A stretch of 33,144 nt of DNA from Octopus bimaculoides. Taxonomy: Eukaryota. Shown here piece after piece: positions 12,524 through 33,144 of the stretch. The stretch is from NCBI RefSeq assembly GCF_001194135.2, contig NC_068994.1, forward strand, positions 27,707,151 to 27,740,294. The letters are read 5' to 3'. The position numbers and the translations under genes are program-made. Within the stretch, counting starts at the first letter, position 1; each line of letters starts with the position of its first letter. The notes below the pieces were generated by a model. That model was given only the letters and a program-made list of their open reading frames with translations. It searched no databases and was not told the origin of the DNA.

Positions 12524-13293
12524 NNNNNNNNNNNNNNNNNNNNNNNNNNNNNNNNNNNNNNNNNNNNNNNNNNNNNNNNNNNNNNNNNNNNNNNNNNNNN
12601 NNNNNNNNNNNNNNNNNNNNNNNNNNNNNNNNNNNNNNNNNNNNNNNNNNNNNNNNNNNNNNNNNNNNNNNNNNNNNNNNNNNNNNNNNNNNNNNNNNNN
12701 NNNNNNNNNNNNNNNNNNNNNNNNNNNNNNNNNNNNNNNNNNNNNNNNNNNNNNNNNNNNNNNNNNNNNNNNNNNNNNNNNNNNNNNNNNNNNNNNNNNN
12801 NNNNNNNNNNNNNNNNNNNNNNNNNNNNNNNNNNNNNNNNNNNNNNNNNNNNNNNNNNNNNNNNNNNNNNNNNNNNNNNNNNNNNNNNNNNNNNNNNNNN
12901 NNNNNNNNNNNNNNNNNNNNNNNNNNNNNNNNNNNNNNNNNNNNNNNNNNNNNNNNNNNNNNNNNNNNNNNNNNNNNNNNNNNNNNNNNNNNNNNNNNNN
13001 NNNNNNNNNNNNNNNNNNNNNNNNNNNNNNNNNNNNNNNNNNNNNNNNNNNNNNNNNNNNNNNNNNNNNNNNNNNNNNNNNNNNNNNNNNNNNNNNNNNN
13101 NNNNNNNNNNNNNNNNNNNNNNNNNNNNNNNNNNNNNNNNNNNNNNNNNNNNNNNNNNNNNNNNNNNNNNNNNNNNNNNNNNNNNNNNNNNNNNNNNNNN
13201 NNNNNNNNNNNNNNNNNNNNNNNNNNNNNNNNNNNNNNNNNNNNNNNNNNNNNNNNNNNNNNNNNNNNNNNNNNNNNNNNNNNNNNNNNNNNN
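12524..13293. other. Assembly gap (N run); others at 5856-6052, 6619-6718, 25085-25416, 28520-28600, 31004-31013, 32144-32169
   Basis: Runs of N, mostly adjacent to microsatellites. Confidence 1.
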
Positions 13294-15864: not shown

Positions 15865-17022
15865 TTATATATATCTGGGTTTGTATGATTGTGTATAGAC
15901 GAATATATTAATCAATAGAATTCCAACTAAGTCTGATTTTCACATTTTATTATTTGCGCTTTTTACAATATTGAAATAAGCCAATATTTTCATGCATTAT
16001 GCAATCATCAGGTTTATGTAGTGAGTCATGTTCCACAAATTGTGAGACAGTTTCTGTTTACCAAATGCCTCTTATAAGATATTGATGAATTGAAGGCTAT
16101 GGAATAAGACACATTTGTAAAGTAGTATTGATTGGAACCTAATAGTTGCAGGATGAACAACTTCTTAACTAAACACAGCCACACCTGAAGACGTTTTGGC
16201 TATTTATGGAACGTTTAGAAATGCCTCATTTATTTTACTTCCATGATATTCCTCTTTTTATAAAACTGAAAGCTTTTATACTAGACCAAAGTAATGGGTT
16301 TTGATGTTGTTTAGCCTCCAAGTCAACCTGATCCAGCAGAGTTCCAGCTATACTCATGCTTTTTTTTTTTTTTTTGTAGACAATGTAGCTAGAGTTACAT
16401 TAGAATTACATTATACAGTGTATTCTTTTTTAGTAAAACAGCAGAGTATGACTTCAGAATATTTGGTTGTTTTTTATAGCAAGTTAAGTGATCACTTAGA
16501 GATCTTGTTCAAGAATTCTTTTGACAATATGAGGCAGTGTCATCTAGAAGTATCTTCCTTTTACAATATTTAAAGAATGAAGGTATTCAATAATGAAGTT
16601 GACTGGATTCATGCCATAGTGCCAACTTGTCAGGAGTGTCTTCTCATAAGGTTCTGCAGTAATCTTGAAAGGTCATTTTAGGAGTAGAATATCTCTTTTG
16701 CAATCTTTCATATTCTTTCAATGGGTTGACTACAAAGTAAAACTTGACATACATGGATGGTTAGGAGGGAGGTGGAGTGGGGTGGAATGCTGGACATAGT
16801 TTTGTATGGAAAGAATTGGTTTTCTATAGAAGAAGACATTTATCCAAGATGTCCCACTGTGATTGTACACTGAACTTCTTAAACACTTCCTGCCAGCAAT
16901 TTGAAGACTTCAGGATGCTGCTGATAATATATCATCTCTTCATTGCTGGGTTTTCATCAACATTTCATGTAAAATTTTATGTTAATATGATTGCAGGAAG
17001 AAGACATATCCAGAAAATAACC

Positions 17023-17788
17023 ATGGCAGTGAACTCCAGAGAGAAAACTATAACCTGGAATGAAATCGACAAACTTCTATATTTCTTTTATGAAGAAACG
17101 ACATCTTTAATTCCTGATCTTTGGGAACAAAAGTCAAAATCAAATAATGAGGTGTCTCTTACTCATTGTTTCTATTTGGGATTGAGTCAATTATTAGCAA
17201 AAATCCATTCCAAACATGTAAAAATTGATTCCAATCAAGATGATGACCACCTTAATAACATTCTGTCTGATATCATTGGTAATTTCCCTGAAGTAAAAGT
17301 CAGTATTATGGCACAAGATAATAATATTCTACTCGAGAGTTTAGTTAAGGAACAACTTGACCTTTGTGAGAATTTTGTTCATTTACAATTATCCGGAGTA
17401 GGACCTCCAAGATTTCAACCTGAGGCTTTCACACAAATATCAGGTGCTTCAGGCAATGACATTTTAAACATTAATGAGCAAGACCAAGTTGTTGCATCTT
17501 TCCATCTACCATGCAAGCTGAAACTGGACATTTATTCTGAAAATGTAAATATGTGTGATGTTGGTGCTGTCATAACAGTTCAGAATCATGGAAACTACAA
17601 TGAAGATGTGATGGCAGTGTGCAATAACGACTCAAAGTACTTACTCTGTGTCAAAGAACCAAGTAGAGACATCTATTCTGGTGATCAAAATAGCATCCAA
17701 AAATATGTTGCTAACATATTTTACCAATGTTTTGATAAAGCTGTGTATTTAAAGATTAAGTCAGTGGCCACCACATTGATTTTTACAG
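17023..17788 (+). CDS. Macrodomain-RING protein, coding exon A (N-terminal region + N-terminal part of a divergent macrodomain)
   Basis: Long open frame (16777-17805). Acceptor ttgcag| at 16996, ATG in ACCATGG context at 17023, donor ACAG|GTGAGT after 17788 (phase 1). Ends AVYLKIKSVATTLIFTG, like the macrodomain SIAFPAISTG motif. Upstream coding exons cannot be excluded. Confidence 0.8.
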
Positions 17789-19367
17789 GTGAGTCATTAT
17801 TTTGATTGTTTATTGAGTCTGTAAATTTACCATATCTTTTGGATTCAACATGAGCTAATGAGGGGTTCTGTACATGAGCATTTATTAGCTAGAAACAGCA
17901 GCCAAATCTTCCTCATCACACCCTGCTGTGTTAAGGAAGTGCTTTTAGAATAGTGCTGATGGATCTTCATTGATTTCAGCAATGAATGTTTTGTTTTTCA
18001 AACCGAACCTCCTACTCATTGAATTATAGTGAGTATTCCACAAACATACGTACTCTTAATATAATCATCAGAGTCAGTGTGACACTGTGTGACAAGGCTA
18101 ACTTTAATTGAGCAAACCAATGATTTAAAGCATTTCAACCATGACCATCCTCTCTTTTTTTTAAGCTATCTTGAAATACATTTTCTAATATATCCTATAA
18201 GATGGTACAGTGTGACTGGATGAAGATTTTGCTGCTATTTTTAGCAGGTCAAGTGAGCAACCACATATAATATTTCTTAACTAGAGTGCATGACCATTTT
18301 GTACAATATATTTTGAATCTATTTTAGGCTAATTCTTTGATTTGAATGATAATTTTTTTCTTACAGTTTTCCATCTATGCTAAAATAAATAAACCCAATT
18401 AAAATTTGTTCCAATTATATTTCCTTTTGTTTTGTTGAAATAAAAAATGTTTTTTTATTATTTTGTAATTTTTAATTAACCTGGTATTGTTATTTTAAAA
18501 ATAAAACAATACCTGATTATAATGGCTGTAGGTTCAATTATTTGATCAGATAACACACATTGCTCCCATCTATTTATCTGAAAAGGAGTACTGCCTCACA
18601 GACTATTTGCTCAAAATCTTGCAAAGACATGTTGATGTTTATCATACACTATATGGATGGTGGGAAGGATATGGTGCAAATTCACGTTCATGAAGAAGGA
18701 ATTTCAAGTAGAATTTTGAGAAATCCTGTTACAAAGTTTCTATTGTTAGAGTGGTGTGAGATAGCAGAAGATTCCCACTCTCTCAGGCTGAATTTTCTTG
18801 ATATTTTATGTGGAGTTGACATGTTCAGTGATGAGTTAATGACTCAGTGGATTGTAGGAGATATTGCTCAGTCTTGAGTTAATATAATTCGGTATTTTCT
18901 TTCATTATTTGTTGAGTCCAAAAGAAGCACTACCCATGTCCTTGGCAGGCTTTCCAAGATTTGTGAGGTTGATGCCACTAATGTTCTGTTGCAGGTCAAC
19001 TCCTGCAAGAAAGACAAAAACACAGAGAAAATCCTAAATGGAAGATATTCTAGAGGTATGAGACCATCTAGTTGTGAAGAACAGAGACCATTGTAGTAGT
19101 ATAAAGCAACAGTATACATAAAGAGTTGAATAATACAACAAAGTATACTGCACTGTGTCTGGTTTAATTACTCCTTAAATTTAAGTAACTAATTCATTAT
19201 TTAAATGTTTCTTCATCACAGAAATTATCTTTCATGTTGGTAAAGTTCTGTTTATGATAAAACCAGAGTGTTATGTGTGTTAGCATAGATAGCAAACAAA
19301 ACTGGCATGGAGAATGGCGTGAAAAATATCATAAAAACTTGTTAATTATTATATTTCTTCAATAAAG

Positions 19368-19551
19368 GTCAACTTGGCATCCCTATGGACACTGTTCTAT
19401 TCTCCATTGTACAAGCATTGAACCAGTTTATGGATAAACAAGTAACAGAGAGCTGTCTCAAGGAAATACACATTGTTGATTATTCTCCTGAAACTTGTAA
19501 AGTCATGGAACAGTTCCTCACTATATACTGGCCAAAGAAAATATCACCAAG
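19368..19551 (+). CDS. Macrodomain-RING protein, coding exon B (C-terminal part of macrodomain)
   Basis: 184-nt exon missed by the ORF track. Acceptor aataaag|, donor CCAAG|GTAAGA, phases 1 and 2 match both neighbours. Translates GQLGIPMDTVLFSIVQALNQFMDKQVTESCLKEIHIVDYSPETCKVMEQFL..., matching the macrodomain TGxxGxP...LKEIHIV pattern. Confidence 0.85.
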
Positions 19552-19570
19552 GTAAGAGAGTTATACAAGG

Positions 19571-20087
19571 TGTAGTAGTGTAGGTAGCTAAATAGTTGAA
19601 TGATTTCCCTTGCAAGAAAGATCATAGAGTAACCTCCCTTTCCTAAGTTTCTCGAAGCATCTGTGTCATGAAACATGATTCTTAATTATTCAAGAAGCTT
19701 AACAGTTCTCTTGGAAGGTTCTAGAATGTCTATCATTCTATTAATAAAAACAGCTTGCTAACCCAGCTTTTCACTTATTAATCGACTAGACTTAGAGCCA
19801 TTCACATCATTACTATGTCCGTCTATTTCTCTATGCCACATGACTGAAAACCACCACTTGGCTGTTATTTCTACATTTTCTATCTCTGAACTTTCTTGCA
19901 TAGATTACTTCATTCAACTAGATTCTGTAATTTGGTTCTATGTATCATCATCAACCAGTAAATAAGATATAATTTTATGTAGTAAATATATAGATCTTGA
20001 ATTTATTCTTTCATCTCTTTATAAATTCATGTATTAACATATATGAACCACATCAATACCTTGAACTGACTATATATTCCCACTCCA
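19571..20087 (+). repeat. Candidate 5' LTR of the intronic Gypsy element
   Basis: Begins TGTAG, ends ...CTCCA just before the PBS-like motif, contains AATAAA at 19743-19748. No second LTR in the window to confirm the ends. Confidence 0.5.
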
Positions 20088-22805
20088 TTAATTGGTGACC
20101 AACCGATGTGGACTCCGAATTCTACCCTGGAAAATAATCACAAACTAATTGGTTACCACCTGACATATTCAGTTATATTCTACTATTTTTCATGTCACAA
20201 TTTTCTTCAACTGAATTATTTTCAACTCAAACGATGATGCTATCTGCTATGGATCATCCTGTATCATCAATTTTCACAGGAGACATCACTGTCTAGTTTG
20301 CCCAGTTAGAAGCATTTTTCTCTTCAAACAAACATAATTCAGACCAACAGCAGCTCTACATTTTACTTAGCTCTATACCCCCATCATTAACTGGAGAATT
20401 GTAAGATATTATTACAGCTCCACCGGCAGATGCAGCGTATTCATCAATTAAAAATGAAATTTTAAGACGAACCTCACTCTCTTCTGTAAAGAAGTTTCAA
20501 AAACTTTTCAGTGATGAGCATTTAGGAGACAACATCATTGAAAATGCTCAGAAAAATGTGGCAGCTCACAGAGGACAATTGTGCTGAAAGTAAGTTGCTG
20601 AAACAACACTTTGTCTCCAGATTACCACAGTATGTTCAAGATATTCTCACCCATTTGACCGATGTTAGCACAGTCAACCAACTTGCAACATTGCCAGATA
20701 AAATTTTGGAGTATACAAAATCCACTCCAGAACAAAACAACTCTCCTTTCCCAGTTGCTACAGTTTCCTCTGAATTTAAAGAATTTCATGAATCTACACA
20801 GAGGACTATAGACAAGCTAGTCACAGAAGTTCAGCTCTTGCATATCAACAATTCAAAAAGTTCTTCACTATGTTGCTATCGTTGTTCTAATTCCCGTTCT
20901 CTTAGCAGATCAAAACCTTTCTGCTGGTATCATTATAAGTTTGGCTCTGCAGCTAAGGAATGTATTTCACCTTGTACATTTAAAACTCAGGAAAACTAAA
21001 AAGCCGAACTCTGAGTGTGACAGCAGTTCCAAGAAAATTTTCTCCTTACCGTGAGTTAACAAATTTAACTTTTGGTATTAATGCTTCAACTCATACAACT
21101 ACTCATCATATAACCACCAATGGATCTCCCGTTTTCTCGCGTCCTCGACAATTACCACCTGAAAAACTTAAAGCAGAGTTCAGTCACACACCTCAAAAAG
21201 TAGCTGATCCATTACCACTCCATTTAGTGAAAAAGAAATCTGGTGATTTTAGACCTACTGGTGACTATAGACAACTCAATGCTATTACCACTCCAGATAA
21301 GTATCTTATACTACATAATCAAGATTTTGCATCTTCTCTGCATGGTTGCAATATTTTCTCAAAAATAGATTTAATACAAGCATATTATCAGATTCCTGTA
21401 AGCCCAAATGATATTCCAAAAATGGCTATTGCAACTCCGTTTCGGTCATTTGAATTTCTTACCATGCCCTTTCATTTAAAAAATGCCACCAGTACTTTTC
21501 AGAAATAATACATGGATTAGATTTCGTCTCTGCCTATACTGATGATCTTCTCATCGCTAGTTCTTCCAAGAAAGAAAATGAGATTCATTTGAAGCAACTT
21601 TGCGAAAGGCTTTCTCAATACAAAATTCGTGTCAATGCTACCAAATGTATTTTCAGTGTGCCTTCTCTCACTTTCCTTGGACATACCATTGATAAGAATG
21701 GAATTAGACCTTTGCCAGAAAAGTTTGAAGCTATCGTAAAAATTCCAGTTCCTGTTTCATTAAGTCAGCTCAGGCAATTTCTTGGATTAGCTAATTTCTA
21801 TTGACACTTTATACCTCATTGTGCTGAAATTTTATACCCTCTCAACAAATTGCTGCAACACCACAAGAAGAAAACAGAAAGATCACTTTAACTTCTACTG
21901 AAATACAAGCTTTCAACAATATTAAACAGAAACTCTCTCATGTCTCCATGTTGGCTCACCCCATTCCTGAAGCTGAAATTTCTCTTGTAGTCAACATGTC
22001 CAAAATTGGCATTAGTGCAGTCATTCAACAACTCCACCATGGCGAATGGCAACCTCTGGTATTTTACTCTAAGCAGTTAAAACCAGCTGAAACTAAATAT
22101 AGCACACTCAGTCGTGAACTGTTAGCTATTTACCTCTCAGTTAAACACTTCCAACACATTTTAGAAGGGAGGAACTTCACAATATTTGTGGACAATAGGC
22201 CGTTATCTTTCGCTTTACACTGCAAACCAGATAAATTTTCCCCTGAGAGACATTCGGCATTTGGATTACATTTCACAATTCATGAGTGATATATGACACA
22301 TCCCAAGTTCTGAGAGCATTGTTGCAGATTCTTTATCCCGTTTACCTGTCAATGCATTATTTTCAACTGCAGAAATTAACTTGGATGAAATGTCTGAAGA
22401 TCAACCATCCATTGATTTGAATAATATACAGCAACCAGAACTAATTCCTTTTGACATCCAATTTTCCCCAGTTGCGACATCAAACAAACAGATCCTTTGC
22501 GATATTTCTTCTGGTAAACCTTGCCCTTTAGTTCCTGAAAAGCATCGCTGTGTCGTTTTCTCAGCACTACACAATATTTCACATCCAGGTATAACAGCAA
22601 CATTAAAGCTTATTTCTGCTCGTTTTGTTTGGCTGAACATGCGTCGAGACATAGCTAATTGGACTCGTACCTGTGTCGATTGTCAAAGATCCAAGGTACA
22701 TAAATATATTTGTGCACTGTTATGTACTTTCTCCACTCCAGATGCACTATTCCAGCACACACATGTTGATATAGTAGGACCTTGGCCTGTGAGTCAGGGC
22801 TACAT

Positions 22806-23255
22806 CATCATCATCATTGAACGTCTGTTTTCCATGCTAGCATGGGTTGGACGGTTTGACCGGGGTCTGGGAAGCCAGGAGGCTGCACCAGGCTCCAGTC
22901 CTATCTGGCAGTGTTTCTACAGCTGGATACCCTTCCTAACACCAACCACACTGTGAGTGTAGTGGGTGCTTTTTACATGCCACCAGCACAGGGGCCAGAG
23001 GAGGCTGGCAACAGCCATGATCAGTTAGTGGTTTTTACATGCCACTGGCACGGAAGCCAGTCAAAGCGGCGCTGGCATCGGCCAGGCTCGGATGGTGCCT
23101 TTAATGTGCCACTGGCACAGGTATCACAGCTACAATTTCCATTTGATTTTCATTTTGATGTTGATGTACTTGACTCAATAGGTCTCCTCAAGCACAGCAG
23201 GTCGCCCTATGATCCAAGGTACTTTTGAATGGGCAGGGGCTGGTTATGTGAAACT
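22806..23255 (-). mobile_element. RTE-tail SINE-like/5'-truncated non-LTR insertion inside the Gypsy integrase
   Basis: (CAT)n tail on + strand and 8-bp TSD GGCTACAT (22798-22805, 23256-23263). Removal restores integrase GPWPVSQGY|MFLLTCINHF. Homologous to 32827-33144. Confidence 0.85.
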
Positions 23256-24091
23256 GGCTACATGTTTTTATTAACCTGTATCAACCATTTTTCCTGCTGG
23301 TCAGAAGTCATTCCACTCACAGACATCTCTTCTTTAACTGTGGCACAAGCTTTAGTCACAGGATGGATTTCTTGTTTCAGAACACCCGTAAAAATAACAA
23401 CAGACTGCAGATGTCAATTTGAAGCTAAGCTTTTCCAGGAGCTTACCGAGATTTTAGGAAGTAAACACATCCATTCAACTAGTTACCACCCAGCTTCGAA
23501 TGATATGATCGAAAGATTTCATCAACAGCTTAAAGTTGTGTTGTGTGCTTCTGCTGATTCATATCAATGGATTGAATTTCTTGCTACTGTTCTCTTGGGT
23601 CTCTGCTCTTCTATCAAAGAAAATATTTGATATTCTCCTGCAGAATTACTTTATGGTTCTTCCTTGATGCTGCCTGGTCAGATGATTGTTCCTGCAAACA
23701 CACAAGATATTGACACTACAAGTTTCGTTGAACGCTTTCATGATTATTCGTCAAAGTTACTATATATGAACACCAGAAAACAAGATGTTACTTGATTTGT
23801 CATGGCATTATCTTAATTGATATTTACTTGATCCAGTTATCATTTAATTATAATCTTAAGAACAGTTCCAGAAATTTGATTAAAGAAATGTTTTTTCCTC
23901 ATCACATAAATATTATAGTATTATTAAATCATTCCATCGCCACTACTTTAATTATGATATCAGGAACTTGACATATCCTTTTGTGTAGATGGCAACCCTA
24001 GGTAATGTTCCTGAGTCACAGTAATGTTAATAGTGACAATAATGTTGATATTGTAATTAACACACATAAAGAAATTCCTTTTATTTTTCAG

Positions 24092-24425
24092 AAAAACTTA
24101 CCAGCCACACTCAATAAATAGGGTCCCAAGATTCCAAAATACTTCAGTGAATCCAGCTGTCCAGAGTTTGGATTATTCCACACATCAGCTAAACAACCTT
24201 AGTTTGCATGGAAACCGCAGGTCAGTAGCAACTCCTAAAGGGTTAAGAAACAGAAATGTGAATGCTTCTGGGGAACGCAGTGATCAAAATCAAGAATGTC
24301 AAATTTGTTTCCAGACATTAACATTTAAAAAGACACTGAAATGCAAGCATAGTTTTTGTCAACATTGTTTAGACACCTGGTTACACATCAAGAAATCTTG
24401 TCCTTTATGTCGTGCACCAGTATAA
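24092..24425 (+). CDS. Macrodomain-RING protein, terminal exon C (linker + C3HC4 RING finger, stop)
   Basis: Acceptor ttatttttcag| at 24091, phase 2 matches exon B. CQIC-x11-CKHSFCQHC-LDTWLHIKKS-CPLCRAPV*: RING-HC spacing with the E2-contacting Trp. Confidence 0.88.
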
Positions 24426-24485
24426 TAAACTATACAAGAATTGGTCCTGAAATACTTGCATACTTCTATCTATAAGTTTGTGATT

Positions 24486-24491
24486 AATAAA
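24486..24491 (+). terminator. Candidate polyadenylation signal of the macro-RING gene (second AATAAA at 24612-24617)
   Basis: AATAAA 60 nt after the stop codon, followed by a U/GU-rich stretch. Confidence 0.5.
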
Positions 24492-25416
24492 TATGTCAAT
24501 ATTTATCTCTTTCTACATGTTGTTGTTGAGTGCACATATGATCCAAGGTGACATCATAGGATATTTGAGAAGACCAACCACCATAAGCTTTGAGCTCTTT
24601 ATCTGAGAGTGAATAAAATATAGATGTTGAGGTTACTTTAGCTGTAGATTGTGCTCTATTCTTGCACTTAGTCTGAAAGAGAAAGTCTTGTTAAGTTAGT
24701 TATAACTTGGCAAGAAAAACACTTCAGATTTCATTTTACACTCCTCATGGTGACCTAACTCATCAAGCATTTCCTATGAACTAATTGTTACTGGCATAAA
24801 TCTTTAGCTGTTTCTTTAGATTCTGAAATTTACCCTCATGATTAAAGGTATTCCAGTCACAACCATGTCACGTTTAATTCCAAGGAGAGAAAATGTCTTG
24901 CAGCATTTATTATGATTTCATATTCACTGCTCATCTCATGAATTTTGATGAACTTTCACTTTCATCCTTCTAACATAGAACTGCTGATAAAATAAGTACT
25001 GGTCAACAAATACTGGGCTGGGCCAGTTAAAAAAGTAAAATAATGTTTGTTATGGATGTGTGTATGTGTGTGTCTGTGTATATANNNNNNNNNNNNNNNN
25101 NNNNNNNNNNNNNNNNNNNNNNNNNNNNNNNNNNNNNNNNNNNNNNNNNNNNNNNNNNNNNNNNNNNNNNNNNNNNNNNNNNNNNNNNNNNNNNNNNNNN
25201 NNNNNNNNNNNNNNNNNNNNNNNNNNNNNNNNNNNNNNNNNNNNNNNNNNNNNNNNNNNNNNNNNNNNNNNNNNNNNNNNNNNNNNNNNNNNNNNNNNNN
25301 NNNNNNNNNNNNNNNNNNNNNNNNNNNNNNNNNNNNNNNNNNNNNNNNNNNNNNNNNNNNNNNNNNNNNNNNNNNNNNNNNNNNNNNNNNNNNNNNNNNN
25401 NNNNNNNNNNNNNNNN

Positions 25417-25699: not shown

Positions 25700-27960
25700 T
25701 CGTCTCTTTTTGTCCTTGAATAGCTGGTGTTTTGTTACCCATATTATTCTTATTCAGGTACTCTTCATCAGTTGCTAATCTGCTCATGTTTTCATGTGCT
25801 GGACTGTGAACTCTGTTTCTTTGTAGATACGTTGATTCTATTGGTGTACTGCCAGGGTTGGTTCCCTGTTGATTGATTATTTGTGAGTCTTGTAGTTCTG
25901 TGTTGAACTCTGTTGAGTTAGCTCTGGTTGTGTTTGTGTGCTATTGTTGCTTCCTTGAATGAAAGAGAGTCCTGGTGGAGCGAGATTGTGTGTTGACACT
26001 GTATCCACTCATCTGTTTCCAAATTGTACGCAGGCAAAGTGGGGAGAAATCATCTCCAATAATTTAACATTTTCTACAAATGGATCCCACTTATTTCTGA
26101 GATGTCAGCAATGCAGGATTAAGCTTCCAGTATTCTAGAGGAATTCAGGTAGAATAGTTCTTACTGTTGATGATATTGAAGGTTTGAATATTCATTCATG
26201 AGTAGTTGTGTTGGTATCTGTACAGAGGAGTCCTCTCATGGCTGATAGTGCCATGGGAAGGGCCATCAACCATTGTCTTTTATTGAGTTGTAGAGAACAT
26301 AGTGCTAGATTTACGGTCTTCATGACGGTGCCCTTGGTCCTTTCATATTGGCCGTTGCCTTGACATTGATAGGAAGATGTTTGAGTTTTCATTGTCCCAT
26401 TAGTGTGAAGAAAGTCCTGGAGCTTCTTACCATCAAATTGGGTTCCTCTGTCAGAATGGATACATCTTGGTGATCCAAATAGTGAAAAGAGGTTGAGCAA
26501 GTGGGAAATTAGTTTTGGTACTCATGTCTTCACATGGGTATGCAAATAGGTACCTTGAGTACTCATCGACTGTTACCAATAGGTAGCGATATTGTGTGGT
26601 TGATGTCAGGGTACCAACAAAGTCGATTGAGAGGCATGATCTCAATGCCTGTATCAACTGATCCTTAAGGGGCTTATGGAAGCTGGGTTTGAGTTAGTTG
26701 CATGTAGAGTAAGTGAGTGTCATTTCACAGATTTTGTTAACAGAGAATGGCAGGTTTTTTACTTTACAGTAGTGAAGCAGCCATATCACTCTTGGGTAGT
26801 ACAGTTGTGTGTGAAGAGTTATCAGTGTTGTCATATCTCTTGTGGCTGCATATCTTGATAGTACATCTGCTGCTTTGTTTTAAATTCCTGGTGTGTACAA
26901 GATTGTATAATTTATGTCTGATAGGTCCAAGCGCCAGCATATAAGTTTTTCATTTTTGGTCTCCTTTGTTTGTTGAAGATCATTGCTACTGTGTATTGAT
27001 TGGTGACAATGTTGCAGTAAAAGGAAGCATGTATTAGGTGGCACTATTTGTGGCAACATTCTACAATTGCACAGGCTTCTCTCTCTACAATGACTTGGTG
27101 TTTTTCTGTCTTTGAAAGGGGTGTTGAATAGAAGGCTACTGGTCTTCCTTATTGTGACAGTGCCCCTCCCAAGGCTTACTTGGAAGCATCTGTTAGTGGA
27201 AAGCAGATAGTGGAACTGCAAGTTCGAGCATATCTAGTAGAGCTTATTACCTTTTAGGATCAGGTACTGCTGAATTTTCAATAATGTGTCTGAGGAAACT
27301 GATTTGCTTCTGAGAGAATTAGCTCTTGCCCTTGTTGATGGTCATGTCAGATGTTTCAGCTGCCTGGATAAATCTCCTGAGGTTATTGTCATATTTGTAT
27401 TACTCTGGGAAATTGTGGCAGCATTGGTACAACCAAAGGGGAGGCATTCAAACTCATACAGTCTCCCCACTGCTTCGATCACTGTCAGTTTATAGTCTTT
27501 GGGTAGAAGTTCCACCTGGTGACATGCAGGTGTCATGTCTATGTTGCTGAAAACCTTGTTTGCTGCTATTTCATTTAGAAGATCATTGATCCAGGGAGTA
27601 GGGTCTGTATCCAGTTGTGTGTAGATATTTATAGTGTTTGAGAAGTTGATCACCAGTCTTTTCTTCTTTTCATTAGATGTCACGAAGCTTTGAACTTGCC
27701 AAGAGCTATGGCTTTTCTAAATTATCTTCTCTGAAAGCAACCTGTCTATTTCATGCTTAATAAACTCTGCATCTCTAGGACTGCATCTTGAAGTTGTGAT
27801 TGGTTTGAGCTTAGAGGTCTTAAAGACTGGAAGTAGTTCATATGCAGTGCATTTGAGGCTTGACATGGACATGCAGAATGACACAGGCTTGTGCATGTCC
27901 TTGAATCTTGAAGTCAATTGTGACTGCTGAGTGTTGACTGAAGGTATCGATTCTGATGAT
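25700..27960 (-). mobile_element. Second, distinct Ty3/Gypsy pol relic (RT-RNaseH-integrase)
   Basis: KKRLVINFS..INIYTQLD, LPFGCTNA, TDASK.ALGG..SQ.GRPVAFYS, LSIDFVG...VDEYSRY, IHSDRGTQF, GNGQYER. Many stops; the catalytic RT motif appears deleted. Boundaries approximate. Confidence 0.85.
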
Positions 27961-27979: not shown

Positions 27980-29570
27980 GATCATTTTGCAAGCATCTGC
28001 CAACATCTTGTGGACTGGTTCAACTTTCGCAGGTGTCCCCAACATTTTAGCATCTCCCTGGCTGAACTCTCGGCTCTTCGATGTCTCCGATACCGCAAAG
28101 ATATTATCATAAAACCAGCCAACAAGGGTGGAGCCATGGTGGTGTGGCACACAGACCTCTGCAAGGCTGAAGCTCTCTGCTAACTTCAAGACACCTCTTT
28201 CTATAGCCCTCTGCCCTCCAATCTCATGCCTAACTACCAACAGATTGCATCCTCCACTATCCATGACCTCATTTCCTCCCACCACTTCCAACTTCATTGT
28301 CCACACTCCACACACCCCCACCATTTACTTCCAAAATCCACAAGCCCAACAATCCTGACCGCTCCATTGTCTCTGTCTGCAGCTGCCCTAAGGAATTGAT
28401 CTCTAAATACCTCAACCATGTCCTCCTTCCCCAGTGGCTTCCCTCCCCTCCCACATCAACAACACTAACTATGCTCTCCATCTTTTTAACTCCTTCTCCT
28501 TTCCTTCTGGCCCATCTAANNNNNNNNNNNNNNNNNNNNNNNNNNNNNNNNNNNNNNNNNNNNNNNNNNNNNNNNNNNNNNNNNNNNNNNNNNNNNNNNN
28601 NTTGATATCGAGTTTATATATGGTGATCCCACACAGCAAAAGACTTCTTGCATTGAAACACTTTCTGGACCTTCAACCCAACCCCCAATCTAACATCTCC
28701 ACACTTCTTTGTCTGGTTGAACTTGTTCTCTCCCTCAACTGCTTCTTGTTTGCAAGGAATTTTTACCAACAGATCTCAGGAGTGGCCATGGGAACGAAAA
28801 TGGGCCCCAACTATGCGAAACTGTTTGTTGGCTACGTTCAGGCCCAAATATTCTCACGATTCACTGGTCCCACTCCTGAACTATACAGTCATTATATTGA
28901 TGACTGTATCGGTGAAACCTCACTCTCCTGCAAACAGCTAGACTCCTTCCTCACTTTCGTCCAATCATTCCATCCTGCCCTTGAATTCTTCTGCATGATT
29001 TCTAACTCTTCCATCACATTTCTCGACATTTCTGTCAGTTTACACCATTCCGCTCTCACTACCTCTATCCACTACAAACACACTGACTTGCACTCTTACC
29101 TTAACTTCTCCTCCTCCCACCCTACCCACACCAAGCTCTCCACCCCCTACTCTCAATTCCTCCATCTGTGTAGGCTCTGCAGTGACAACCATGAATTTGA
29201 GACTCAGTCTCAACTCATGGTTCGCCACTTCATCCTTTGTGGATATCCCCTCACCACTATTCACACTGCCCTTGCCAGGGCACGTTCCATGGACCACCAT
29301 TGCCTGTCTCCTATTTCCCCTCACCTATCACCCCTCCAACACACCATTCTCCGAGCCTTCTGGTGATTCCAGTCTGACCCCTCCACCTCACACATCTTCC
29401 CCAACCTATTCCTTCCCTCCTTCAAATGAGCCCACAACCTGCATGAGCTCCTGGTCCACAGTTTCTTCCCTAACTCCATCTCCCAGCCTGGCTCATTCCC
29501 GTGCTTCCATCCATACTGATGTACTTGCCCCTACCTCTCCAACACCACCCTCTTCACATTTTCACTCCAC
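27980..29570 (+). mobile_element. Penelope-like retroelement RT, Neptune-like, truncated before the endonuclease
   Basis: IIIKPANKGG, KIHKP, QQISGVAMGTKMGPNYA, YIDD, FLDI, SYLNFSSSHP..PYSQFLHLCRLCS, followed by a Cys linker GSFPC....CTCPY. Confidence 0.85.
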
Positions 29571-30711: not shown

Positions 30712-31135
30712 ATATGTATAGTCCGTTCTGTCTGTCTGTTTGTGAGCTTATAACTGGAGTATTGCTCACCCAATCGCACTGAAATTTAAAACATGGATAC
30801 GTGACAGAGCTGGCCGTTCCGTAATCTAAGAACATTTTCAAAATAGTTAGTTTCAAGGTGAGAATCGCTATTTTTGTAATCTTTTTGTCCTGTTTGTTCC
30901 GCCATTAAAATCAATCAGTTGCATACACATGGAGTGCCTTGATTATAACCAAACATGTCCACTCAACTGTTTCAACCTTCTTTTTAGGCGCAATATATTA
31001 TGTNNNNNNNNNNGCATACACATGGAGTGCCTTGATTATAACCAAACATGTCCACTCAACTGTTTCAACCTTCTTTTTAGGCGCAATATATTATGTCATG
31101 CGACACTAATGCAAGGATTTAGTGGGAAACATACA
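30340..31135. repeat. Perfect 113-bp inverted repeat pair (30340-30452 and 31023-31135)
   Basis: Base-by-base comparison shows the two segments are exact reverse complements. Confidence 0.92.
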
Positions 31136-32143: not shown

Positions 32144-32379
32144 NNNNNNNNNNNNNNNNNNNNNNNNNNCCCCAGCAGAAAACAGCTTCAGGAGTTGTGA
32201 AGAACAAATTTGTATAGTCTAATCATTAAAACATTGATTTAATTATGAACATAGAAAGAAATTATACATTAATCCCTATTTTTGTAAGCAGTTGTATCCG
32301 TAAAAATTTTATTTACAGAGAGCAGAAATTGAAAGAAGATATATGAAATGGATGTGTGTATGTGTGTGTTTCCGGCTAA

Positions 32380-32537: not shown

Positions 32538-32826
32538 GTAAGTTGAAGAAACAATAAGAATATTTTAATATGTTTCAGCTTCAGTTTATATTTTATATGT
32601 TACCAGACAGTGTGTTTATAGTTAATAAAGTATATTAACACAGGTGCCTCTCTCCTAACTTCCAGAAAAATTGATATTTTTTAATGAAATTTTCCACAAA
32701 TACATTTTAGATGGTGTGGATTCCGATTATATCAGAATTTGTCGTGAAAAATATTTCCGTGGTTGCAGAGAAAAGTTTCGGAAATTTTACAAACACACAC
32801 ACACACGTGTGTATATATATATATAT

Positions 32827-33144
32827 CATCATCATCATCATCATCATCGTCGTTTAACATCCACTTTCCATGCTAGCATGGGTTGGACGATTTGACTGAG
32901 GACTGGTGAAACCGGATGGCAACACCAGGCTCCAGTCTAATTTGGCAGAGTTTCTACAGCTGGATGCCCTTCCTAACGCCAACCACTCAGAGAGTGTAGT
33001 GGGTGCTTTTACTTGTCACCCGCACGAAAACGGTCATGCTCGAAATGGTGTCTTTTATGTGCCACCTGCACAAGCCAGTCCAGGGGCACTGGCAACGATC
33101 TCACTCGAAAATCCTACGGGAGCCAGTCAGGCGGTACTGGCAAC
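32827..33144 (-). mobile_element. RTE-tail SINE-like repeat (same family as 22806-23255), extends past window end
   Basis: (CAT)n tail and shared ttccatgctagcatgggttggac...ctggatgcccttcctaacgccaacc core. Confidence 0.8.

What the first reader, a model, noticed from the sequence alone, without database searches (positions are those of the whole stretch)
16997..24425. Host gene encoding a divergent macrodomain fused to a terminal RING-HC finger
Three phase-compatible exons give a 427-aa protein: ~140-aa N-terminal region, macrodomain-like fold, basic/polar linker, C3HC4 RING, then stop. In mammals, ADP-ribose reading and ubiquitin ligation are coupled across separate proteins (PARP9 macrodomains with the DTX3L RING) or through WWE in RNF146. 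A compact single-chain macro+RING with no PARP catalytic or Deltex C-terminal domain is an architecture I do not recognise from human proteins. It could be a lineage-specific ADP-ribose- or nucleotide-sensing E3 ligase, possibly in innate immunity (inference). The macrodomain is split across two exons, one missing from the ORF track, so automated annotation could miss it.
Basis: partly seen in the sequence, partly recalled or inferred. Interest (0 to 1): 0.72.

Follow-up and report, generated by a model that had tools for sequence, protein, structure and literature searches.

The report
Octopus RING ligase with shrunken macrodomain
This is a real, already annotated octopus gene for a RING ubiquitin ligase that carries a hidden, cut-down macrodomain; it looks like an octopod-only, fast-evolving offshoot of the invertebrate DTX3L-type ligases that lost its Deltex C-terminal domain, so it is a variant of a known kind.

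Summary
The window is Octopus bimaculoides or a very close relative. The gene is annotated as UniProt A0A0L8GS77 (483 aa).

The RING-HC is clear-cut. The macrodomain is real by homology and fold but degenerate:
- Pfam Macro scores below threshold.
- About 35 residues are missing, including the catalytic Asn and the glycine-rich loop.
- Foldseek and PDB matches go to PARP14, PARP9 and macroH2A macrodomains.

Every non-octopod protein checked that matches both domains is an invertebrate Macro-RING-DTC protein, the ancestral DTX3L-type architecture. These share the phase-1 intron in the macrodomain loop-2 glycine with Patella and Tegillarca genes. No DTC is encoded in the window or in the 47-kb O. 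vulgaris locus.

Orthologues were found only in octopods (Octopus, Argonauta). dN/dS is about 1, yet the reading frame has no indels. The best reading is a DTC-less DTX3L-type RING E3. Canonical ADP-ribose reading is doubtful.

The parts
10978..11017 (+). Putative 5' leader exon; only its 3' part is defined and the exon start is unknown. The donor is AAG|GTTCGT at 11017|11018. It splices to the acceptor at 16996|16997. In this genome the ATG is followed by an in-frame TGA, giving a 5-codon uORF.
   Evidence: It matches the first coding exon of O. sinensis LOC115219124 isoform X1 (MVLLHQKSLGWRK) at 11 of 13 residues. The surrounding block 10449-12125 is 88.7% identical to the O. vulgaris locus.
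16997..17788 (+). Exon 1. The acceptor AG is at 16995-16996. ATG 17023 sits in the context ACCATGG. An alternative unspliced start, ATG 16987, is used by the UniProt model. The exon encodes the N-terminal domain and the first part of the macro-like domain. The donor is CAG|GTGAGT, phase 1.
   Evidence: (99.6% identity to A0A0L8GS77).
17044..17391 (+). N-terminal alpha/beta domain (aa 8-123 of the 427-aa form), tentatively a tandem KH-like fold.
   Evidence: The AF2 model has pLDDT 80 and pTM 0.69. The top Foldseek matches in both PDB and BFVD are KH domains, but only at E of about 0.02. There is no sequence-level match.
17518..17788 (+). Macro-like domain, first part (aa about 166-255). It includes the site of the roughly 35-residue deletion and the lost NAAN/GGG motifs. 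It ends inside the loop-2 glycine codon.
19368..19551 (+). Exon 2: the C-terminal part of the macro-like domain (QLGIPMDTV...IHIVD...IYWP). The donor is AAG|GTAAGA, phase 2.
   Evidence: (100% identity to A0A0L8GS77), plus (matches to PARP14 MD1/MD2).
24092..24425 (+). Exon 3: copy 1 of a duplicated terminal exon. It holds the 44-aa polar linker unit, the basic linker, the RING and the stop codon. An internal alternative donor, CAG|GTCAGT at 24220|24221, leads to copy 2, which lies outside the window.
   Evidence: Plus-strand AATAAA motifs lie at 24424, 24486 and 24612 (the motif is at chance density across the window).
24297..24410 (+). RING-HC (C3HC4) finger, aa 386-423. It has I388, W413, P421 and R424 at the usual E2-contact and linchpin positions.
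   Evidence: Pfam zf-C3HC4_2 E = 3e-9 and zf-RING_2 E = 7e-9. PDB RING matches are. dN/dS is 0.1 against O. vulgaris copy 1 (2 non-synonymous, 4 synonymous). The roles assigned to these residues come from general RING knowledge, not from a test here.

Best explanation
This is a protein-coding gene found so far only in octopods. Its order is a KH-like N-terminal domain, a cut-down macrodomain, a polar repeat linker and a RING-HC, followed by a stop.

It most likely descends from the invertebrate DTX3L-type Macro-RING-DTC ligases. The descent involved truncation after the RING (loss of DTC) and an internal deletion of about 35 residues in the macrodomain.

Proposed mechanism (inferred):
- The RING recruits an E2~ubiquitin and acts as a conventional E3.
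- The KH-like and macro-like modules serve as substrate- or partner-binding surfaces rather than a canonical ADP-ribose pocket.
- Without DTC it cannot perform the ADP-ribose-linked ubiquitin chemistry of Deltex ligases.

Alternative 3' processing gives three isoform types: read-through to the RING of copy 1 (427 or 439 aa), splicing to a duplicated exon with a second linker unit and RING (483 aa), or a RING-less form.

Shown here: the gene model, the domain homologies, the absence of DTC, the shared intron, and the evolutionary rates. Inferred: E3 activity, loss of ADP-ribose binding, and any role in immunity.
For: Gene model and annotated orthologues and isoforms.

Macro homology:
- PDB sequence matches go only to PARP14 MD1/MD2 and PARP9 MD1 (E = 2.6e-8 to 0.07).
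- Foldseek on the AF2 model gives macroH2A, PARP14 MD2, PARP9 MD2 and Af1521 (E about 1e-6, TM 0.6-0.69).

Link to the Macro-RING-DTC family:
- hhalign of the octopod family against it gives probability 99.5%, E = 1.6e-22. The alignment is collinear from macro through RING and ends where DTC begins.
- A phmmer search of 1.84 billion representatives was run. All 17 non-octopod hits checked that match macro plus RING carry PF18102 DTC or are fragments.
- The macrodomain intron has the same position and phase 1, in the loop-2 glycine codon, in octopus, the Patella gene and the Tegillarca gene.

Absence of DTC: none by tblastn in the window or in the 47-kb O. vulgaris locus, which runs up to the neighbouring tRNA-synthetase gene.

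Selection (O. bimaculoides vs O. vulgaris):
- There are 0 indels and 0 stops in 984 coding nt, against 8 gap openings in 1.6 kb of intron. About 5 would be expected, so P(0) is about 0.007.
- dN/dS is 1.05 for aa 1-328 and 0.1 in the RING.

Literature: ancestral DTX3L carried a macrodomain (10.64898/2026.04.23.720386).
Against: - The RING alone is generic. Small unrelated RING proteins outscore DTX3L-type RINGs. The closest solved RINGs are RNF165/Arkadia and RNF8.
- A collinear hhalign hit would also arise from independent domain fusion.
- The shared intron could be common to all macroPARP-type macrodomains. PARP14-like genes were not checked.
- The N-terminal domain shows no sequence homology to the N-termini of Macro-RING-DTC proteins.
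- The full-length AF2 model is of low confidence (mean pLDDT 50.7, built from 3 sequences).
- No expression or biochemical data could be consulted.
- dN/dS of about 1 is also what relaxed constraint gives.
Confidence: 0.6

Rival explanations
1. One reading: a functional single-chain ADP-ribose (or nucleotide) reader coupled to a RING E3. The macrodomain still binds ADP-ribosylated targets and directs their ubiquitination.
For: - The macro fold is retained.
- The loop-2 motif TG-x-x-G is kept in Octopus (IFTGQLGIP).
- The adenine-contacting Asp column is kept in O. vulgaris and Argonauta (ED).
- Conserved blocks surround the pocket: SKYLL, EP, FYQCF, ATTLIFTG, LHIVD.
- Some readers, such as PARP9 MD2, bind ADP-ribose without the full glycine-rich loop (10.64898/2026.08.12.744356).
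Against: [quoted passage not shown]
- No Asn or Gly is conserved at these positions across the three orthologues. That Asp is Asn in O. bimaculoides, and the second loop-2 Gly is lost in Argonauta.
- Pfam Macro matches only model positions 68-114 of 118, at 15-17 bits against a threshold of 22.
Confidence: 0.2
2. An independent, lineage-specific exon-shuffling fusion. A PARP14/PARP9-type macrodomain fragment was joined to an unrelated RING exon, with no descent from a DTX3L-type gene.
For: - The RING is generic by sequence.
- The linker and RING sit on their own exon, which has itself been duplicated.
- The best solved-structure matches of the macro part are PARP14 MD1/MD2.
Against: - All 17 non-octopod hits checked that match both domains in the same order are Macro-RING-DTC.
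- The best single-domain macro match is to the Owenia Macro-RING-DTC protein, not to the PARP14-like 2,100-aa proteins.
- The macro intron is shared with two molluscan Macro-RING-DTC genes.
- Both the octopod RING and the DTX3L-type RINGs in these proteins are C3HC4. Spacing is identical from C3 onward, and C2-C3 is 11 vs 12 residues in P0034 and P0108.
Confidence: 0.15
3. A decaying or functionless gene drifting neutrally. The annotated isoforms would be transcriptional noise.
For: - dN/dS is 1.05 over aa 1-328, with dN (0.065) about equal to dS (0.062) and to intron divergence of roughly 8%.
- The macrodomain is degenerate.
- One annotated isoform lacks the RING.
Against: - There is no indel or stop in 984 nt, although introns carry about 5 gaps per kb.
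- The open frame and motif blocks are conserved out to Argonauta at about 37-40% identity.
- All eight RING ligands are kept in both exon copies in two species, with RING dN/dS of 0.1.
- Splice sites are conserved.
Confidence: 0.05

Closest known systems
Invertebrate DTX3L-type Macro-RING-DTC ligases, e.g. Patella vulgata LOC126816685, Tegillarca granosa KUTeg_005431, Owenia fusiformis CAH1781385, Branchiostoma belcheri LOC109486858 and Antedon mediterranea XP_071946686
   Same: The order macrodomain, long polar linker, C3HC4 RING is collinear (hhalign 99.5%). The phase-1 intron in the macro loop-2 glycine codon is shared. The macrodomain is of the macroPARP type.
   Different: There is no Deltex C-terminal domain and no PARP14-type RRM. 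The macrodomain is shortened by about 35 residues and lacks the Asn/Gly-rich loop. The protein is much shorter: 427-483 aa against 700-1,500 aa.
Human DTX3L-PARP9 heterodimer
   Same: It couples macrodomain(s) and KH-type modules with a RING-HC E3. Components are fast-evolving (preprint 10.64898/2026.04.23.720386).
   Different: In humans the functions sit on two chains. DTX3L has RING plus DTC, which carries the ADP-ribose/ubiquitin chemistry. PARP9 has two intact macrodomains and an ART domain. The octopod protein has none of DTC, ART or an intact macro pocket.
RNF8 (the name given to the O. vulgaris orthologue by annotation)
   Same: It has a C-terminal C3HC4 RING with detectable similarity (PDB 4ayc, E = 4e-7, RING only).
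   Different: There is no FHA domain and nothing outside the RING matches. The name is a RING-only transfer and is misleading.
Non-binding or reader-only macrodomains (macroH2A1.2, PARP9 MD2)
   Same: They are the top structural neighbours of the model. They are examples of macro folds with altered glycine-rich loops.
   Different: Those domains keep the full-length fold of about 180 residues. The octopod domain has lost a helix/strand segment.

Membership tests
Macro domain (Pfam PF01661) | Scores above the Pfam gathering threshold over the whole domain | tested here: not met
   The score is 15.4 bits for the full protein and 17.2 bits for the domain alone, against a cut-off of 22. Only model positions 68-114 of 118 are matched.
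Macro domain (Pfam PF01661) | Three-layer alpha/beta/alpha macro fold | tested here: met
   Foldseek on the AF2 model returns macroH2A1.2, PARP14 MD2/MD3, PARP9 MD2, Af1521 and MacroD2, at E = 6e-7 to 2e-5 and target TM 0.55-0.69. Local pLDDT is only 60-80.
Macro domain (Pfam PF01661) | Catalytic or ribose-contacting Asn and the glycine-rich loop (N-x6-GG[VLI]) | tested here: not met
   The MAFFT and hhalign alignments place a 5-residue gap at NAAN, followed by a gap of about 33 residues. No Asn or Gly is conserved among the three orthologues. The motif definition is taken from 10.64898/2026.08.12.744356.
Macro domain (Pfam PF01661) | Diphosphate-binding loop 2 (S/T-G-[IV]-[FY]-G) | tested here: inconclusive
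   Octopus has IFTGQLGIP and IFTGQFGIP, which keep G-x-x-G. Argonauta has IFTGPGQVS, which does not.
Macro domain (Pfam PF01661) | Binds ADP-ribose or a derivative | not testable with these tools
   This needs a binding assay.
Deltex / DTX3L-type E3 ligases | Deltex C-terminal (DTC) domain directly after the RING | tested here: not met
   The protein stops 4 residues after the last RING cysteine. There is no PF18102 hit. tblastn with three DTC domains finds nothing at E below 0.1 in the window or in the 47-kb O. vulgaris locus.
Deltex / DTX3L-type E3 ligases | RING-HC (C3HC4) as in the DTX3/DTX3L subgroup | tested here: met
   The C3HC4 pattern is present, with Pfam E = 3e-9. The RING sequence itself is not specifically Deltex-like. 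The RING-HC subgroup assignment comes from my own knowledge.
Deltex / DTX3L-type E3 ligases | Macrodomain N-terminal to the RING (non-tetrapod DTX3L architecture), with shared gene structure | tested here: met
   The hhalign alignment is collinear. The intron position and phase are identical in the octopus, Patella and Tegillarca genes. Literature.
Deltex / DTX3L-type E3 ligases | N-terminal RRM and/or KH-like domains | tested here: inconclusive
   There is no RRM hit. The N-terminal model has KH domains as its top Foldseek neighbours in two libraries, but at E of about 0.02. There is no profile match to the family's N-termini.
macroPARPs (PARP9/14/15) | C-terminal PARP/ART catalytic domain (and WWE in PARP14) | tested here: not met
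   There is no PARP or WWE hit in the protein. The protein ends at the RING.
RNF8 | N-terminal FHA domain plus C-terminal RING | tested here: not met
   There is no FHA hit. Similarity is confined to the RING.
RNF146 (Iduna) | WWE domain reading poly(ADP-ribose) next to the RING | tested here: not met
   There is no WWE hit. Only the RING matches (2d8t, E = 9.5e-5).

The most novel reading that the evidence does not exclude
The shortened macro-like domain may still be a working ligand sensor for ADP-ribose, a related nucleotide or a viral factor. Joined to a plain RING, it would make a minimal 'read-and-ubiquitinate' effector. Alternatively it could act as a dominant regulator or decoy of the octopod DTX3L-macroPARP axis. 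It would be diversifying under pathogen pressure, with alternative RING exons adding isoform variety.
Probability: 0.15. Interest if true: 0.55.

Novelty: new variant of a known kind. Interest (0 to 1): 0.35.

Why it matters
If the descent is right, this gene is a natural experiment on the DTX3L module. It shows what remains useful when both the DTC domain and the macro pocket are removed and only the KH-like, macro-scaffold and RING parts are kept.

It also shows a practical gap in annotation. Public domain annotation of the octopus proteins lists only RING families, and one orthologue is misnamed RNF8-like. The macro-like domain and the Deltex kinship are therefore invisible to routine pipelines.

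The gain is modest. The gene is already annotated. The macro-plus-RING coupling is known from invertebrate DTX3L-type proteins. No function has been tested.

Tried and rejected
- An exact look-up of A0A0L8GS77 in the assembly index found nothing. The O. bimaculoides second terminal exon could therefore not be placed. I used the O. vulgaris locus instead.
- tblastn for a DTC domain in the window and in the O. vulgaris locus gave nothing.
- Ranking by the RING alone, to show Deltex ancestry, failed because generic RINGs score higher.
- For the N-terminal domain, profile-profile comparison with Macro-RING-DTC N-termini gave probability 0.2%. A PDB sequence search gave nothing meaningful. Foldseek gave only weak KH neighbours.
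- A third homologue search, seeded with the Patella Macro-RING-DTC protein, aimed to find an intact octopus paralogue. It returned no cephalopod hits. The search is limited by its word index, so this says nothing either way.
- Literature searches for the gene identifiers returned no papers.
- AATAAA motifs after the stop codon are at chance density in this AT-rich window. They are only weak support for polyadenylation there.
- The name RNF8-like was rejected (no FHA domain). RNF146-like was rejected (no WWE domain). macroPARP was rejected (no ART domain).


Full report
**The observation**

The window is AT-rich eukaryotic DNA with assembly gaps and much transposon debris. I searched all GT/AG combinations around the three reading-frame pieces. 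The splice sites are:
- donor CAG|GTGAGT after exon 1;
- donor AAG|GTAAGA after exon 2;
- a strong acceptor, TTTTATTTTTCAG|A, before exon 3.

The product is not a chance ORF chain. A search of 5.8 billion proteins returns Octopus bimaculoides A0A0L8GS77 (483 aa, 'RING-type domain-containing protein') and an O. vulgaris protein named 'RNF8-like isoform X3'. By tblastn, exons 1 and 2 are 99.6% and 100% identical to the O. bimaculoides protein. The window is therefore that species or something nearly identical to it.

First, it starts at ATG 16987, 12 codons upstream. That upstream exon lies in the window at about 10978-11017, with donor AAG|GTTCGT. In this genome it has an in-frame TGA after five codons. 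It is therefore a leader here, and ATG 17023 (context ACCATGG) would be the first usable start on the spliced transcript.

Second, the 483-aa form has a second 44-aa linker unit and a slightly different RING. In the O. vulgaris locus the terminal exon exists twice, 14.5 kb apart, and each copy is an intact frame of linker unit, RING and stop. The long form uses a donor inside copy 1 to reach copy 2; in the window this donor is CGCAG|GTCAGT at 24220|24221. Copy 2 is not in the window and presumably lies beyond its end.

O. vulgaris CAI9732818.1 (441 aa) is the read-through form. A further annotated isoform lacks the RING.

**The domains**

RING. The RING is unambiguous: C386-x2-C-x11-C-x-H-x2-C-x2-C-x10-C-x2-C423, with Pfam E = 3e-9. 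It carries I388, W413, P421 and R424 at the positions that usually contact E2~Ub. That last point rests on general RING knowledge and was not tested.

Middle region. Pfam Macro reaches only 15-17 bits against a threshold of 22, and covers only the last third of the model. Other evidence supports a macrodomain:
- PDB sequence searches hit nothing except PARP14 MD1/MD2 and PARP9 MD1 (E = 2.6e-8 to 0.07).
- A modest AF2 model was built from three sequences. Its overall pLDDT is 50.7, and 60-80 in this region.
- Its top structural neighbours are almost all macrodomains: macroH2A1.2, PARP14 MD2, PARP9 MD2, Af1521 and MacroD2, at E about 1e-6 and target TM 0.6-0.69.

So it is a macrodomain by homology and fold. 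Alignment with canonical macrodomains shows what is missing:
- a five-residue gap at the NAAN motif;
- a gap of about 33 residues after the position of the glycine-rich loop;
- no Asn or Gly conserved there among the three orthologues.

The loop-2 motif TG-x-x-G survives only in Octopus. According to 10.64898/2026.08.12.744356, the glycine-rich loop and its Asn hold the distal ribose. A canonical ADP-ribose pocket is therefore unlikely, though not excluded.

N-terminal domain. The first 135 or so residues model well on their own (pLDDT 80, pTM 0.69). The secondary-structure order is beta-alpha-alpha-beta-alpha, then beta-alpha-beta-beta-alpha. In two independent structure libraries the top neighbours are KH domains: vigilin KH4, MEX-3C KH1, the Krr1/Pno1/Dim2 tandem KH proteins, and giant-virus KH proteins. 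These matches are only at E of about 0.02. No sequence-level support was found. I call this domain KH-like, tentatively.

**Relatives**

A phmmer scan of 1.84 billion representative proteins finds only one further orthologue, from Argonauta hians (419 aa, 40% identity, same architecture without the long linker).

The next hits that match both the macro and the RING parts are Macro-RING-DTC proteins. They come from a crinoid, amphioxus, an annelid, a limpet, a clam and an oyster. Some carry a PARP14-type RRM at the N-terminus. Of the 17 such proteins scanned, 16 carry the Deltex C-terminal domain, three of them truncated within it. The remaining one, P0009 (321 aa), shows no DTC and may be a fragment.

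Further evidence on descent:
- Profile-profile comparison of the octopod family with this family gives 99.5% probability. The alignment runs from the start of the macrodomain to the end of the RING and stops where DTC begins.
- The preprint 10.64898/2026.04.23.720386 states that DTX3L orthologues carried a macrodomain until PARP9 arose in vertebrates. This is therefore the ancestral DTX3L-type architecture.
- Gene structure agrees. The octopus intron 1 splits the loop-2 glycine codon after its first base (TLIFT|G QLG). The Patella and Tegillarca Macro-RING-DTC genes have an intron at the same aligned codon and phase (ISS|A IFG and ISS|G IFG).
- No DTC is encoded anywhere in the window or in the 47-kb O. 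vulgaris locus, which extends to the next gene.

Caveats:
- The RING alone is generic and does not point to Deltex.
- A collinear match would also follow from an independent fusion.
- I could not check whether PARP14-like genes share the intron.

**Evolutionary rate**

Comparing O. bimaculoides with O. vulgaris over residues 1-328:
- There are 49 non-synonymous and 12 synonymous differences.
- dN is 0.065, dS is 0.062 and omega is 1.05. This is about the same as intron divergence (about 92% identity).
- The 984 coding bases have no indel or stop, while 1.6 kb of aligned intron has 8 gap openings. About 5 would be expected, so P(0) is about 0.007.
- The RING of copy 1 has omega of about 0.1, based on only six differences.
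- The frame and several motif blocks persist in Argonauta.

Together these point to a maintained but rapidly diversifying protein rather than a pseudogene. This fits an immune role, as with vertebrate DTX3L and PARP9, but does not demonstrate one.

**Most likely function**

The protein is most likely a conventional RING E3. Its KH-like and macro-like modules probably act as binding surfaces. KH-type domains mediate the DTX3L-PARP9 and PARP14 contacts in vertebrates (PMC13224862; the preprint). Pairing with an octopod macroPARP or DTX3L-like partner is therefore a reasonable guess.

Without DTC it cannot carry out the Deltex-specific ADP-ribose/ubiquitin chemistry. I put 0.6 on this overall reading. 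The rivals are:
- a still-functional ADP-ribose reader, 0.2;
- an independent fusion, 0.15;
- a decaying gene, 0.05.

**Verdict**

The architecture is not new in kind. It is a DTC-less, macro-degenerate, octopod-restricted variant of the invertebrate DTX3L-type ligases, and the gene is already annotated, though its macro-like domain is not.

Interest is moderate to low (0.35). Novelty: a new variant of a known kind.

Noticed in passing
window 20538-23630 (+), inside intron 2 (19552-24091): A decayed LTR-type retroelement on the same strand as the gene. Its broken ORFs carry RVT_1, RT_RNaseH, Integrase_H2C2 and rve, plus a gag-like ORF with a Cys-rich knuckle. The orthologous O. vulgaris intron is of similar length but does not align here, so the insertion is lineage-specific.
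   Followed up: partly
window 23785-24663; L001 17479-18528 and 32295-33185: The terminal exon and about 0.3 kb of flank on each side form a duplicated block. The window copy is 93.7% identical to O. vulgaris copy 1 and 82.7% identical to copy 2. Within O. vulgaris the post-donor parts of the two copies have dS of only 0.065, lower than between the orthologues (0.185). This may indicate gene conversion.
   Followed up: partly
window 10978-11017 and L001 8060-8099: The upstream exon is an open N-terminal extension in O. vulgaris and O. sinensis (MGLLCQKSLGWRK / MVLLHQKSLGWRK). In the window it carries TGA at codon 6, so the species differ in their predicted N-terminus.
   Followed up: yes
window 22801-23221 and 32810-33094; at least five copies in L001: A dispersed repeat of about 250-420 bp, at 76-90% identity and in both orientations. 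It overlaps the retroelement's integrase region. It is possibly a SINE or an LTR fragment.
   Followed up: no
window 10000-11600: This is the most GC-rich part of the window (GC 0.42-0.46). It has long overlapping low-complexity ORFs on both strands (10012-10602 on +, 10081-10845 on -) and is 82-89% conserved with the O. vulgaris locus. It surrounds the 5' exon and could be a promoter region or an old mobile element.
   Followed up: no
window 478-891 (-), 26192-27683 (-), 28434-29366 (+): Further transposon debris: a DDE_3 transposase fragment, RVT_1 and rve fragments on the minus strand, and a 310-aa ORF interrupted by an N run with no Pfam hit.
   Followed up: partly
window 5856-6052, 6619-6718, 12524-13293, 25085-25416, 28520-28601, 31004-31013, 32144-32169: Seven assembly gaps totalling 1,517 N. 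Most are flanked by TA/CA-type microsatellites, which appear as YIYIYI/HTHT in translations. The 332-N gap lies 660 bp downstream of the gene's stop codon.
   Followed up: no
L001 44016-46214 (-): In O. vulgaris the next called gene downstream is a class-I tRNA synthetase (PF01406, cysteinyl-type) on the opposite strand. This bounds the locus and is useful for synteny tests.
   Followed up: no
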